A stretch of 63,776 nucleotides of DNA, the filler included, from Reticulomyxa filosa (Eukaryota; Protista; Foraminifera), in NCBI GenBank assembly GCA_000512085.1. It is 20 parts of 20 records of this genome, joined end to end, with 100 filler letters (N's around TTAATTAATTAA, not from the genome) between each part and the next. Parts side by side here need not be neighbours in the genome. Positions count along the whole stretch, not along the records: positions 61,953 to 63,776 come from ASPP01000851.1; 19 more parts are not named here. One strand, 5' to 3'. Below are positions 61,953-63,776 of this stretch, piece after piece (within the stretch, counting starts at the first letter, position 1; each line of letters opens with the position of its first letter). The notes beneath the pieces were generated by a model that saw only the letters and a program-made list of their open reading frames with translations, had not been told where the DNA came from and did no database searches. A program made the position numbers and the translations under genes.

Positions 61953-63765
61953 TTATTTTTATTATAAACTTTTGGAAATGAAATGTAAACAGGAATAGGT
62001 CGCTTTGAATCATTAATATAATTATTCCATAATGATTCTTCTAAATGACGACAAAAAATGCTTTTTCCTGATCCTGATTTTCCTTGAATTATCATTACTT
62101 TTTTTTTATAGGATGGCTGTTGTTCTTGTTTTTCACTTTTTTCTTCTGCTTTATCTTCTTCTTTTTCTTCCAAAAATGTAAGCACATGTTGATGGCAATC
62201 ACATGTTTTTTCTTTGTCATCATCTTTGCCATCTTCATGTGCATAATTATTTGCTTGTAATGGAATATATGTTTCAAGTGCTTGTGATATTGCAATATCA
62301 TCTTCCATTTCTTGTTTTCTTGACTCTTGTAATATTGACGCAAAGTCATCACAACTAGCCGGATTCTTGTCTCCAATGATATTTTGTTTATAATATTCAT
62401 ATAACACCATATAAATAGCTTGCTCTTTTTCTCTTACTTTTTCTTTCTCTTTTGTGGTCATTTCCTTTTCTTTCTCTTTTGCATATCCTGGAGTAAAAGT
62501 GCAAAGCTGTTTATATACAAATTCTGCGATTTTTAATGAACTATTGCTATCAATTTCTGTTTTACTTTTATTAAATAATTGTGGTGGTTTCAAAATTCCA
62601 ATAGCTAAATGAGATTTATAACGTTTTGCAATTTTTTCTATTTCTTTATCATTACTCCATTCACAAATAATATCATTAATTTTGGTCAATGTTTCATCAC
62701 TCACTTGTTTTAGATCTTCATCTTCTGGACTATTTGGTTGCCATGCTCTAATATGTTCATAAAATAAATGACTTAATTTTGGATTGCTAAATATAGTATA
62801 TCCTTCCAATGTTGTAAATTTTTTTAATGTTGCTTGCATCTCCACATATACTTTATGTTTTGGAACATATAATTTAATATTGTGAAATCGATGATGCGTT
62901 TTTGATTGTCTTTCAAAAAAATCTTTGTCTTCAGAGACAATTAAATTAAATTGTTCTGCTTTTTTCATTACTCCAACTGCTGTTTGTAATTTAGTTCCAT
63001 TATCACATAAAATGGTAAATCTTCCAACATCAAATGCTCTCCTAAAAGCTTTGGTATCACCACCATAATCAAATTCAATCTTTTCCAATAATCTTGCTGT
63101 ATCTTTTACTTTTAATGGTTTTACCACTGTAATTAAATATTTTTGTAATTCTGTTACTAAATTCAATATCTCATTACTTACCATTGCACTTTCACTCCGA
63201 GTGATTAAATCTTCTAGACTTTCTGCATGTTGAAAAATTTTATCTGCTTTTAATGTATATGAAAATCCTAATTTGATTGGATAATTACATTGATAATGAT
63301 TACTTTCTACAATGGTATTATCGTCACTTGAGCAAATCGAGTGTTCTGAATTGAAAAACATTACCCTTAGAATTGATGAAACTGTTAATTGTTTACAATC
63401 TGGACAAGGATAAGATGTCATATTTGATACAAATGAAATAGATTTAAATTCTTCATTCACCCATACTGGAATTTTTGCTTTCGAAGCTAAGCAATTGTCA
63501 TTTGTGCAATAACCTTGCAAATTTATTCCTGGTTTTGTTTCTCCAACTTCTGTTTTTTCATCTTCTTTTTTTAATTTATCTACATTTTTTTCATCTTCTA
63601 AATCTTTTTTTACTACTTCCTTTTTTATATTAAATACAAACAAAGTAAAAAAAAAAAAATAGCATGTTTTAATTATGTACATATATTTTAATATATCATA
63701 GTGACCGGTTCATTTTCAATTTTGGGTTGTTCTTTCGTGGTCTTTAATTCTGCACTTTGCTCATT
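61953..63765 (-). CDS. NLR-like protein: Cys-rich module + RelA/SpoT-like nucleotidyltransferase domain + NACHT NTPase (partial at both ends)
   Basis: Exon 63765-63706, GT-AG intron 63705-63620, then an open frame to the contig edge. RSH-like motifs at 63127-62747; Walker A IIQGKSGSGKS at 62083-62060, followed by LW...IPVYIS. Confidence 0.8.
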
Positions 63766-63776
63766 CTATATATATT

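What the first reader, a model, noticed from the sequence alone, without database searches (positions are those of the whole stretch)
61953..63765. Spliced eukaryotic NLR-like gene with a RelA/SpoT-like (alarmone synthetase-type) effector domain fused to a NACHT NTPase
Seen: ORF residues ~186-312 (nt 63127-62747) carry, in order, KVKDTARLLEKI, DYGG, FDVGRFTI, EDKDFFERQSKTHHRFHNI, VEMQAT and SHLFYE. About 220 aa later comes the NACHT Walker A GKSGSGKS. The gene is AT-rich with a GT-AG intron, so it looks host-nuclear rather than contaminant. Established: small alarmone synthetases have Syn motifs R.K...S..EK, D..G.R (catalytic Asp), DY...K.SGYRS.H, EIQ.RT (catalytic Glu) and H...Y. RelA_SpoT is a described N-terminal effector domain of fungal NLRs, and toxic SAS enzymes act in bacterial antiphage defence. 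Inference: this is a protist STAND immune/death receptor whose oligomerisation switches on pyrophosphotransferase activity ((p)ppGpp, (p)ppApp or tRNA pyrophosphorylation). The putative catalytic Asp and Glu are retained. The guanine-stacking Tyr of GYR appears as His (THHR), hinting at changed acceptor specificity. I know of no description in Rhizaria, but could not search.
Basis: partly seen in the sequence, partly recalled or inferred. Interest (0 to 1): 0.92.

Follow-up and report, generated by a model that had tools for sequence, protein, structure and literature searches.

The report
Foraminiferal NLR with alarmone-synthetase domain
This is part of a gene of the amoeboid protist Reticulomyxa filosa for an immune-receptor-like switch protein whose front end is related to bacterial toxin enzymes that pyrophosphorylate ATP; this layout has so far only been annotated in fungi and has never been tested at the bench.

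Summary
The piece is a whole 1,824-bp contig of Reticulomyxa filosa carrying the partial gene RFI_00813 on the minus strand. One uninterrupted 576-codon exon holds four parts:
- a ~100-aa four-cysteine beta domain of no known family;
- an RSH (RelA/SpoT-homologue) synthetase-fold domain, aa 151-340;
- a ~190-aa linker;
- the start of a NACHT NTPase with its Walker A motif.

The RSH call rests on independent lines:
- Pfam RelA_SpoT in correct register, below threshold for this copy, in 38 of 40 paralogues.
- A family-only profile hits only Tas1, a (p)ppApp synthetase toxin, among solved structures.
- AlphaFold models match Tas1, SAS1/2, Rel and CapRel (Z 10-11.7), above other nucleotidyltransferases.
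- The Mg-binding Asp, the E-x-Q motif and the triphosphate-binding Lys/Arg are near-invariant.
- dN/dS is about 0.1.

Full-length paralogues continue into NACHT, pentapeptide and WD40 repeats, and there are at least 60 R. filosa records.

The main caveat is that the acceptor-loop Tyr is His here (H 29, Y 8, F 1 of 40), and Tyr-to-Phe cripples known RSH enzymes. Activity, product and immune role remain inference.

RelA_SpoT-NACHT-WD40 is already annotated in fungi. New here are the Rhizarian lineage, the Tas1-like clade and the extra N-terminal domain.

The parts
63706..63765 (-). Upstream coding exon of 20 codons, preceded by an AG acceptor at 63767-63766. The exon carrying the start codon lies beyond the contig end.
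   Evidence: Frame translations. The database protein P0001 (RFI_00813, partial) begins with this exon's 20 residues, joined to the large exon.
63620..63705 (-). 86-nt GT-AG intron, AT-rich with a poly-T tract.
   Evidence: Sequence. The junction matches P0001.
61953..63619 (-). Large exon, open to the edge of the contig. It encodes ORF aa 22-576 with all domains in one uninterrupted frame.
   Evidence: 100% identity to P0001.
63239..63529 (-). N-terminal all-beta domain of ~100 aa (aa 52-148) with four near-invariant Cys (C59, C64, C93, C96; CxNxxC...CPxC), probably a zinc site. No known family.
   Evidence: AF2 pLDDT ~94 for this part. Conservation. Only weak matches in PDB and Pfam.
62663..63232 (-). 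RSH (RelA/SpoT-homologue) synthetase-fold domain, Tas1/Apk-like (aa 151-340). The core motifs are at aa 191-312 (nt 62747-63112). Key residues are K193, R197, K201, D218, R221, H264, E281, Q283, H305, Y308 and R312.
62876..62932 (-). Strand beta3, acceptor ('G') loop and strand beta4 (EDKDFFERQSKTHHRFHNI). H264 stands where RSH enzymes have the acceptor-stacking Tyr.
   Evidence: Alignments A2 and to Tas1, RelP and RelQ. H 29, Y 8, F 1 of 40. Low pLDDT for the loop.
62123..62662 (-). Linker of ~180 aa (aa 341-520) with Lys/Glu-rich low-complexity inserts (for example nt 62420-62479). No family match. It is the least conserved part.
   Evidence: 41-62% identity to four paralogues; dN/dS 0.13-0.41.
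61955..62122 (-). Start of the NACHT NTPase (aa 521-576), with Walker A GKSGSGKS at nt 62060-62083. It is cut off by the contig end.
   Evidence: Pfam NACHT E=1e-3 for aa 529-568, profile 2-41 of 167. Complete NACHT in paralogues, E down to 6e-12.

Best explanation
The piece carries part of one member (RFI_00813) of a large Reticulomyxa filosa family of NLR-like STAND proteins.

Shown:
- The domain order is a four-cysteine beta domain, an RSH pyrophosphokinase-fold domain, a linker and a NACHT NTPase. Full-length paralogues add pentapeptide repeats and 9-14 WD40 repeats.
- The RSH domain belongs to the Tas1/Apk-like branch.
- It keeps the donor-ATP and Mg2+ catalytic residues and is under strong purifying selection.

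Inferred, by analogy with other NLRs and with fungal 'class 1' enzymatic effector domains:
- A ligand seen by the WD40 propellers releases NACHT-driven oligomerisation.
- Oligomerisation unleashes the RSH domain.
- The RSH domain transfers pyrophosphate from ATP to the 3'-OH of an acceptor.
- Because the nearest characterised relatives (Tas1/Apk1, MuF-Apk2) make (p)ppApp and kill by draining ATP/ADP, the most likely output is adenine-nucleotide pyrophosphorylation, leading to growth arrest or death of the cell or syncytial sector.

My odds: architecture 0.95; active pyrophosphokinase 0.6; adenine-nucleotide acceptor 0.35.
For: Identity and architecture:
- 100% match to RFI_00813.
- 55 of the 59 proteins found are R. 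filosa records, with further long and fragmentary ones.
- NACHT, pentapeptide and WD40 repeats are present in full-length paralogues P0060-P0062.

RSH fold:
- Pfam RelA_SpoT hits 38 of 40 paralogues, best E=9e-7.
- The family-only profile finds only Tas1 (6ox6) in the PDB, E=0.0058.
- The bridged profile scores Tas1 4e-22, RelP 5e-9 and RelQ 1e-5 over the full domain.
- AF2 pLDDT is 79 and 84.
- Foldseek's top hit is Tas1, E=1.4e-5, and all listed rows (50 shown) are RSH enzymes.
- An unbiased VIA search of 48,161 chains gives Tas1 Z 11.6 (166 aligned), SAS2 11.6, SAS1 11.5 and CapRel 9.8. Other NTases score 8.2 or less.

Catalytic residues:
- D218 39/40, E281 37/40, Q283 37/40, K193 38/40, K201 39/40, R221 38/40.
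- K193, K201, D218 and E281 are also invariant across the remote relatives.
- They correspond to FaRel2 D90 (Mg2+), E145/Q147 (donor adenine) and the basic triphosphate residues (PMC11782079).
- The D-x-x-R strand motif is shared with Tas1 (DLAR), in contrast to the D-x-x-G-x-R of SAS enzymes.

Selection: dN/dS of the RSH domain is 0.08-0.15 against four paralogues. It is the lowest of the four regions compared in every one of them, though only marginally in one (0.103 against 0.105).

Relatives: Tas1/Apk1 and MuF-Apk2 make (p)ppApp and deplete ATP (PMC10083569). A MuF-fused protein (P0097) is among the remote hits.
Against: - This copy is below Pfam's gathering score (19.9 bits against 27).
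- The acceptor-loop Tyr is His264 here and in 29 of 40 paralogues. Tyr-to-Phe at this site is the established way to impair RSH enzymes (FaRel2-Y128F, PhRel2-Y143F, FaRel-Y175F; PMC11782079). Activity or acceptor choice may therefore differ.
- Structural similarity does not separate (p)ppApp, (p)ppGpp and tRNA enzymes. Tas1, SAS1, SAS2 and Rel are tied within 1 Z unit.
- Nothing is known about expression, as no runs were listed.
- There is no biochemical evidence for any eukaryotic NLR-RSH protein.
- The gene in the window is truncated at both ends by the contig. Its own WD40 part is not seen.
- dS values are near saturation (0.9-1.7), so the ratios are rough.
Confidence: 0.55

Rival explanations
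1. The domain is active but is a tRNA 3'-CCA pyrophosphokinase like CapRel, FaRel2 or PhRel2. Activation of the NLR would then shut down translation rather than drain ATP.
For: CapRel is a clear structural match (Z 9.8-10.4, 155-157 residues aligned). FaRel2 is a weak hit of the bridged profile (E=0.16). CapRel is itself a sensor-coupled immune effector (PMC11782079).
Against: By sequence the family is far closer to Tas1 (82 bits) than to FaRel2 (15 bits). The family-only profile sees only Tas1. The region around the acceptor loop is rich in Lys, Arg and His (aa 258-270), more like the large positive patch described for nucleotide-using synthetases (PMC11782079). I did not compute a surface.
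Confidence: 0.15
2. The domain makes (p)ppGpp or pGpp, as the Pfam name implies and as was assumed for fungal NLRs. The product would act as a signal or a GTP-pool poison.
For: RelP and RelQ are significant profile hits (5e-9 and 1e-5). They are tied with Tas1 in Z. Some Tas1-like exported synthetases prefer guanine nucleotides or use both (PMC12691689).
Against: The D-x-x-R motif and the overall profile similarity point to the Tas1/Apk branch. The acceptor loop lacks the G-Y-R-S signature of (p)ppGpp SAS enzymes and reads T-H-H-R-F instead.
Confidence: 0.12
3. The domain is a catalytically weakened or dead RSH fold kept as a nucleotide-binding, adaptor or regulatory module. The true effector would be elsewhere, for example the N-terminal four-cysteine domain or a partner protein.
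For: His replaces the acceptor-loop Tyr, whose loss of the hydroxyl (Y to F) impairs known RSH enzymes. This copy is below the Pfam threshold. An extra conserved domain sits N-terminal to it.
Against: The Mg-binding Asp, E-x-Q and the basic triphosphate residues are near-invariant over 40 paralogues of 47-86% identity. The domain has the lowest dN/dS of the protein. Pseudo-enzymes usually lose such residues. Tyr and His alternate at the loop position (8 Y, 29 H), and unlike Phe, His can both stack and hydrogen-bond.
Confidence: 0.15
4. The juxtaposition is an artefact: a chimeric assembly, bacterial contamination, or a decayed pseudogene copy.
For: The contig is only 1,824 bp in a highly fragmented assembly. 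Some family gene models look mis-built (P0057 joins an RSH fragment directly to WD40). No read data could be laid.
Against: RSH and Walker A lie in one uninterrupted 576-codon frame. The same order is found on many independent contigs up to 14.8 kb. The piece has 27.6% G+C, a GT-AG intron and GC3 of 14%. dN/dS is about 0.1.
Confidence: 0.03

Closest known systems
Tas1/Apk1, type VI secretion (p)ppApp synthetase toxin of Pseudomonas aeruginosa (PDB 6OX6), and the MuF-fused Apk2 enzymes
   Same: It is the best and only PDB hit of the family-only profile. The bridged profile gives 82 bits over the full domain. It is the top Foldseek hit and the joint-top VIA hit. It shares the D-x-x-R strand, E-x-Q, H..YE..R and the basic helix.
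   Different: Identity is only 16-18%. Tas1 is a secreted bacterial toxin with a PAAR delivery domain and an immunity protein. Here the domain is internal to a eukaryotic STAND protein. Tas1 has the loop Tyr (G-Y-S-G), and this protein has His. The product here is unknown.
Fungal NLRs with an N-terminal RelA_SpoT domain (RelA_SpoT-NACHT-WD40, for example in Gaeumannomyces graminis and Sordariales)
   Same: The order is the same: an RSH-type effector, NACHT and WD40 repeats. These too are known from annotation only and have never been assayed (PMC4986451; PMC12258605).
   Different: The lineage is different (Rhizaria). The foraminiferal domain mostly falls below the Pfam threshold. None of the outside hits whose source I could trace was fungal, though many of the 73 were not traced. 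The foraminiferal proteins have an extra four-cysteine N-terminal domain, a pentapeptide stretch before WD40, and a much larger copy number. The direct relationship to the fungal domains was not tested.
CapRel(SJ46) and FaRel2, toxSAS tRNA pyrophosphokinases of antiphage and toxin-antitoxin systems
   Same: The toxSYNTH fold is the same (Z about 10). The logic is the same: a toxic RSH domain held in check by an attached or partner sensor or inhibitor domain and released by a trigger (PMC11782079).
   Different: Sequence similarity is marginal (E=0.16). Their control is by a pseudo-zinc-finger domain or an antitoxin, not by a NACHT-WD40 module. Their substrate is tRNA.
Small alarmone synthetases RelQ/SAS1 and RelP/SAS2
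   Same: The fold and catalytic motifs are the same. Profile hits are significant (5e-9 and 1e-5), and Z is 11.4-11.6.
   Different: They are housekeeping (p)ppGpp enzymes with D-x-x-G-x-R and G-Y-R-S motifs and a C-terminal tetramerisation bundle. None of these features is seen here.

Membership tests
RSH (RelA/SpoT homologue) synthetase superfamily, Pfam PF04607 | Score at or above Pfam's gathering cut-off (27 bits) | tested here: not met
   16.1 bits in the whole ORF and 19.9 bits (E=9e-4) for the domain alone, in correct register. 38 of 40 paralogues hit at E<=1, best 9.1e-7.
RSH (RelA/SpoT homologue) synthetase superfamily, Pfam PF04607 | SYNTH fold: a central mixed beta-sheet framed by helices, most similar to solved RSH synthetases | tested here: met
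   All listed Foldseek rows (50 shown) are RSH enzymes. VIA Z is 10-11.7 for Rel, Tas1, SAS1/2, RelP and CapRel against 8.2 or less for other NTases, including in an unbiased scan of 48,161 chains.
RSH (RelA/SpoT homologue) synthetase superfamily, Pfam PF04607 | Mg2+-binding Asp on strand beta2, the E-x-Q motif on beta5, and basic residues for the donor triphosphate | tested here: met
   D218, E281/Q283 and K193/R197/K201/R221 are present. They align with the equivalent residues of Tas1, RelP and RelQ and are kept in 35-39 of 40 paralogues.
RSH (RelA/SpoT homologue) synthetase superfamily, Pfam PF04607 | Acceptor ('G') loop Tyr that stacks on the acceptor base | tested here: not met
   His264 is at the aligned position. 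The family has H 29, Y 8, F 1 of 40, with 2 gaps. Y to F impairs known enzymes.
RSH (RelA/SpoT homologue) synthetase superfamily, Pfam PF04607 | ATP-dependent 3'-pyrophosphotransfer activity | not testable with these tools
   Needs biochemistry.
Tas1/Apk-like (p)ppApp synthetase toxins | Closer in sequence to Tas1/Apk than to (p)ppGpp SAS, long RSH or tRNA-modifying toxSAS | tested here: met
   The family-only profile hits only Tas1. The bridged profile gives Tas1 82 bits, RelP 40, RelQ 29 and FaRel2 15; that profile contains Tas1-like toxins, so it is biased. The D-x-x-R motif is shared.
Tas1/Apk-like (p)ppApp synthetase toxins | Delivery domain (PAAR, MuF and the like) and a cognate immunity protein or hydrolase | tested here: not met
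   No such domain is in the ORF or in full-length paralogues. The domain is fused to NACHT instead. Neighbouring genes could not be assessed on a 1.8-kb contig.
Tas1/Apk-like (p)ppApp synthetase toxins | Product is pApp, ppApp or pppApp, with ATP depletion | not testable with these tools
   Inferred only from the nearest characterised relatives (PMC10083569).
NLR-like STAND proteins (NACHT clade) | NACHT NTPase with a Walker A P-loop | tested here: met
   GKSGSGKS is at aa 534-541. Pfam NACHT matches aa 529-568 with profile 2-41, E=1e-3. The score is sub-threshold only because the contig ends 35 residues later.
NLR-like STAND proteins (NACHT clade) | Complete NACHT (Walker B and so on) followed by C-terminal superstructure-forming repeats | tested here: inconclusive
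   Not present in the window, which is cut at 61953. It is met in paralogues: NACHT E down to 6e-12, pentapeptide repeats, and 9-14 WD40 repeats.
NLR-like STAND proteins (NACHT clade) | Ligand-triggered oligomerisation and an immune or death output | not testable with these tools
   Inference from the architecture.
Fungal RelA_SpoT-NACHT NLRs | Common descent of the RSH effector domain with the fungal ones | not tested
   No fungal sequence was available by reference. None of the outside hits whose source I traced in the exhaustive profile search was fungal, but many of the 73 were not traced.

The most novel reading that the evidence does not exclude
This would be the first eukaryotic immune or allorecognition receptor family whose death effector is a Tas1-like adenosine 3'-pyrophosphokinase. 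Activation of any of about 60 or more NACHT-WD40 sensors in the syncytial foraminifer would convert ATP/ADP to (p)ppApp and kill the affected sector by energy collapse. The conserved four-cysteine N-terminal domain would act as a built-in inhibitor or sensor of the toxic domain, as zinc-finger-like antitoxin domains do for bacterial toxSAS. The clade it shares with Ank-RSH-NACHT and RSH-TPR proteins would mark an unrecognised RSH-STAND module that extends beyond forams; only one of those contigs (L007) shows eukaryotic neighbour genes, the other three could be bacterial, and a Guillardia theta protein is a borderline hit that was not placed in the tree.
Probability: 0.25. Interest if true: 0.85.

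Novelty: new variant of a known kind. Interest (0 to 1): 0.6.

Why it matters
Alarmone-type pyrophosphokinases are regarded as bacterial and plastid enzymes. As toxins they are known from bacterial secretion systems, toxin-antitoxin modules and antiphage defence.

RelA_SpoT domains on fungal NLRs have been listed since 2014 but never assayed. Here the same logic appears independently in Rhizaria. The domain belongs to the Tas1/Apk branch, its catalytic residues are intact, it is under strong purifying selection, and the family has been greatly expanded.

This gives a tractable single-domain test, by expression and nucleotide profiling, of two questions:
- whether eukaryotic NLRs can kill by nucleotide pyrophosphorylation;
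- whether (p)ppApp exists in eukaryotes.

It also adds a bacterial-conflict-derived effector to the list shared between prokaryotic and eukaryotic immunity.

If the domain proves inactive, it is still a clean case of an RSH fold recruited as an NLR module.

Tried and rejected
- Single-sequence phmmer of aa 151-337 against PDB sequences gave only chance hits. Profiles were needed.
- NCBIfam, PADLOC and PHROGs gave nothing for the window protein.
- The look-up of sequencing runs listed no run. Read laying was therefore not used, and expression, splice junction and domain continuity could not be checked with reads.
- The N-terminal four-cysteine domain was not identified:
  - The Pfam scan of 32 members gave only weak zinc-ribbon-type hits.
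  - The PDB profile search gave chance hits.
  - VIA gave one weak beta-sandwich match, Z 5.7.
  - The language-model atlas pointed to unnamed, mostly rotifer clusters.
I do not claim a new fold.
- Model coordinates are not exposed, so I could not measure whether D218, E281 and H264 cluster in space, or whether the N-terminal domain touches the active site.
- Literature searches for Reticulomyxa plus NACHT and for NACHT plus RelA-SpoT found nothing.
- Rejected readings:
  - Bacterial contaminant: rejected on the intron, 27.6% G+C, and the fact that the family occurs almost only in R. filosa records.
  - CD-NTase or other NTase: lower Z, and the RSH-specific E-x-Q and H..YE..R motifs are present.
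- Spliced model: I searched the large exon by reference only. The 20-codon upstream exon is too short to search. I made no joined sequence myself. The only spliced protein used (P0001) is the database's own record, and from it I queried only residues lying in the large exon.
Full report
**What is there.**
The piece (61953-63776) has 27.6% G+C and no N. Its only long reading frame is on the minus strand. It is 576 codons long, runs from 63682 to the edge of the piece, and has GC3 of 14%.

It is 100% identical to the database protein 'hypothetical protein RFI_00813, partial [Reticulomyxa filosa]', whose contig is 1,824 bp, so the whole piece is that contig.

That record starts with 20 residues encoded by 63765-63706. 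An AG precedes this exon at 63767-63766. An 86-nt GT-AG intron (63705-63620) joins it to codon 22 of the long frame. The first exon with the start codon and everything after residue 576 lie beyond the contig.

I searched the large exon by reference and built no joined sequence myself.

**Check of the observation.**

| Motif | ORF residues |
|---|---|
| KVKDTARLLEKI | 191-202 |
| DYGG | 205-208 |
| FDVGRFTI | 217-224 |
| EDKDFFERQSKTHHRFHNI | 251-269 |
| VEMQAT | 280-285 |
| SHLFYE | 304-309 |
| GKSGSGKS | 534-541 |

**Is it an RSH domain?**
Sequence evidence:
- Pfam finds RelA_SpoT in the right register: aa 192-283 against profile 3-88 of 113. The score is below threshold, at 16.1 bits in the whole ORF and 19.9 bits (E=9e-4) for the domain alone, against a cut-off of 27.
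- The protein has at least 59 relatives in the word-indexed search, 55 of them R. filosa records.
- In an alignment of 40 domain copies (A1, 47-86% identity to the query), 38 hit RelA_SpoT on their own, best E=9.1e-7.
- A profile of these 40 copies alone finds one RSH protein among all PDB sequences. This is Tas1 (6OX6), the type VI (p)ppApp synthetase toxin, at E=0.0058.
- An exhaustive profile search of 1.84 billion representatives gave 73 hits.
- Adding 15 of the remote hits (A2) raised Tas1 to E=4.4e-22 over the whole domain. It also brought in RelP (5e-9), RelQ (1e-5), Rel, RelA, the exported Streptomyces synthetase and FaRel2. A2 contains Tas1-like toxins, so its ranking is biased. The A1 result is not.

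Structural evidence:
- AlphaFold models have mean pLDDT 79 for the domain alone and 84 with the N-terminal domain.
- Foldseek ranks Tas1 first, E=1.4e-5, and every listed row (50 shown) is an RSH synthetase.
- A Foldseek-independent VIA scan of 48,161 chains gives Tas1 Z 11.6 (166 residues, rmsd 3.7), SAS2 11.6, SAS1 11.5, Rel 11.1, RelP 10.9 and CapRel 9.8. Other nucleotidyltransferases score 8.2 or less.

**Catalytic residues.**
In the HMMER alignments D218 pairs with the strand-beta2 Asp of Tas1, RelP and RelQ, and E281-x-Q283 pairs with their E-I-Q. In FaRel2 these are D90, which holds Mg2+, and E145/Q147, which read the donor adenine. Basic residues on the preceding helix hold the triphosphate (PMC11782079).

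| Residue | Kept in paralogues (of 40) |
|---|---|
| D218 | 39 |
| E281 | 37 |
| Q283 | 37 |
| K193 | 38 |
| K201 | 39 |
| R221 | 38 |
| Y308 | 39 |

K193, K201, D218 and E281 are also invariant in the 27-row alignment with remote relatives.

The strand motif is D-x-x-R, as in Tas1 (DLAR), not the D-x-x-G-x-R of SAS enzymes.

Pairwise Nei-Gojobori dN/dS of the RSH part against four paralogous loci is 0.08-0.15. It is the lowest of the four regions compared in every locus, though only marginally in one (0.103 against 0.105). dS is 0.9-1.7, so these values are rough.

**The caveat.**
At the acceptor ('G') loop the relatives have G-Y-R-D/S and this protein has T-H-H-R-F, so the stacking Tyr is His264. 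Across paralogues the position is H 29, Y 8, F 1, with 2 gaps.

Tyr-to-Phe at exactly this site is described as the well-established way to make RSH enzymes catalytically impaired (FaRel2-Y128F, PhRel2-Y143F, FaRel-Y175F; PMC11782079). Unlike Phe, His can hydrogen-bond, and the natural H/Y alternation suggests that both work. Even so, activity and acceptor choice cannot be read from the sequence.

**Architecture of the family.**
Full-length paralogues show the whole layout. Examples are RFI_29183 (P0060, 1,368 aa), ETO36350 (P0062, 1,734 aa) and RFI_03493 (P0061). The order is:
1. a short N-terminus;
2. the four-cysteine beta domain;
3. the RSH domain;
4. the linker;
5. a NACHT domain (E down to 6e-12);
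6. a pentapeptide-repeat stretch;
7. 9-14 WD40 repeats.

The N-terminal domain (aa 52-148) is modelled with pLDDT about 94 as all-beta. It has four near-invariant Cys: C59, C64, C93 and C96. I found no family for it.

**Relatives outside R. filosa.**
- Close family members occur only in a few environmental contigs: P0045 from JGI, P0053 from ENA, and P0075 from an NCBI WGS record (prefix AAFX01), which I believe is a soil metagenome but did not verify.
- The next relatives form a supported clade with the foraminiferal family (97/92). They are P0106 (Ank-RSH-NACHT), P0089 and P0088 (RSH-TPR).
- A further RSH-TPR protein, P0108, was not included in the tree. It lies on a contig with an acyl-CoA oxidase gene and a 7TM-RGS gene, so that contig is eukaryotic.
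- A Guillardia theta protein is a weaker hit.
- The other remote hits are bacterial or phage polymorphic-toxin-type proteins carrying eCIS-core, MuF or DUF4781 domains, and small stand-alone proteins. The MuF link matches the Apk2 (p)ppApp synthetases (PMC10083569).

**How it most likely works.**
Shown: a STAND/NLR layout with an intact-looking, constrained, Tas1-like pyrophosphokinase domain in the effector position.

Inferred: the WD40 propellers sense a ligand, NACHT oligomerises, and the RSH domains become active. They then pyrophosphorylate an acceptor using ATP. The acceptor is most probably AMP, ADP or ATP, as with Tas1/Apk1 and Apk2, which kill or arrest cells by draining ATP (PMC10083569).

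The rivals are tRNA pyrophosphorylation (CapRel/FaRel2-like), (p)ppGpp synthesis, and a weakened pseudo-enzyme.

A role in non-self recognition in a fusing syncytial organism, as for fungal NLRs, is plausible but is speculation on my part.

**Comparison with what is known.**
[quoted passage not shown] As far as those papers show, this is annotation only.

The library holds no paper with both Reticulomyxa and NACHT, and none with both NACHT and RelA-SpoT.

The kind is therefore known. What is new:
- the lineage;
- the Tas1-like subfamily;
- the His loop;
- the extra N-terminal domain;
- the pentapeptide stretch;
- the size of the expansion.

**Verdict.**
The mechanism is a well-founded hypothesis with one real caveat, His264.

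I rate it a new variant of a known kind, with interest 0.6.

Noticed in passing
window 63239-63529 (-), ORF aa 52-148: A conserved ~100-aa all-beta domain with four near-invariant Cys (CxNxxC...CPxC) precedes the RSH domain in nearly all paralogues. AF2 pLDDT is ~94. It has no Pfam or PDB relative, and language-model look-alikes are unnamed, mostly rotifer clusters. Two near-invariant Tyr (Y130, Y134) sit in a YxxxY stretch. An inhibitor role like that of the toxSAS zinc-finger-like antitoxin domains is only an idea.
   Followed up: partly
L007 3139-5778 (P0108); L008 508-2025 (P0088): Metagenomic proteins join a related RSH domain directly to TPR repeats, with no NTPase detected. The L007 contig is eukaryotic by its neighbours, an acyl-CoA oxidase and a 7TM-RGS protein.
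   Followed up: partly
L001 2745-6257 (P0106): An Ank-RSH-NACHT protein of 1,170 aa on an ENA metagenome contig is a second RSH-NACHT fusion outside the Reticulomyxa family. Together with P0089 and P0088 it forms the clade that is sister to the foraminiferal family in the domain tree (97/92). The organism is unknown.
   Followed up: partly
P0114 (Guillardia theta GUITHDRAFT_100517), residues 449-532: A cryptophyte protein of 1,281 aa is a borderline hit of the family profile (E=5.7e-4) and has no Pfam domain at E<=0.001.
   Followed up: no
P0063 (R. filosa ETO26992, 1,017 aa), residues 713-898: This paralogue carries the RSH domain near its C-terminus, with no NACHT and no Pfam hit elsewhere. 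It is named 'vcbs repeat-containing protein'. It is either an alternative architecture or a fused gene model.
   Followed up: no
P0057 (R. filosa RFI_31460, 321 aa): The gene model joins an RSH fragment (residues 2-110) directly to WD40 repeats, skipping NACHT. This is probably a mis-built model or a deletion copy. P0002 of the same family is misnamed 'viral A-type inclusion protein'.
   Followed up: no
window 62420-62479 and 62123-62200 (-): There are Lys/Glu-rich low-complexity inserts in the linker between the RSH domain and NACHT. The linker is the least conserved part (41-62% identity to four paralogues).
   Followed up: partly
P0060 about residues 880-925; P0061 984-1009: A short pentapeptide-repeat stretch sits between NACHT and the WD40 propellers in full-length paralogues. 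This combination is unusual for NLR-like proteins.
   Followed up: no
ESM Atlas fold search with model md25c563fc39c: RSH-fold clusters without Pfam annotation appear in Nucleocytoviricota, tailed phages and diatoms. TM is about 0.5 only, so these are leads and not findings.
   Followed up: no
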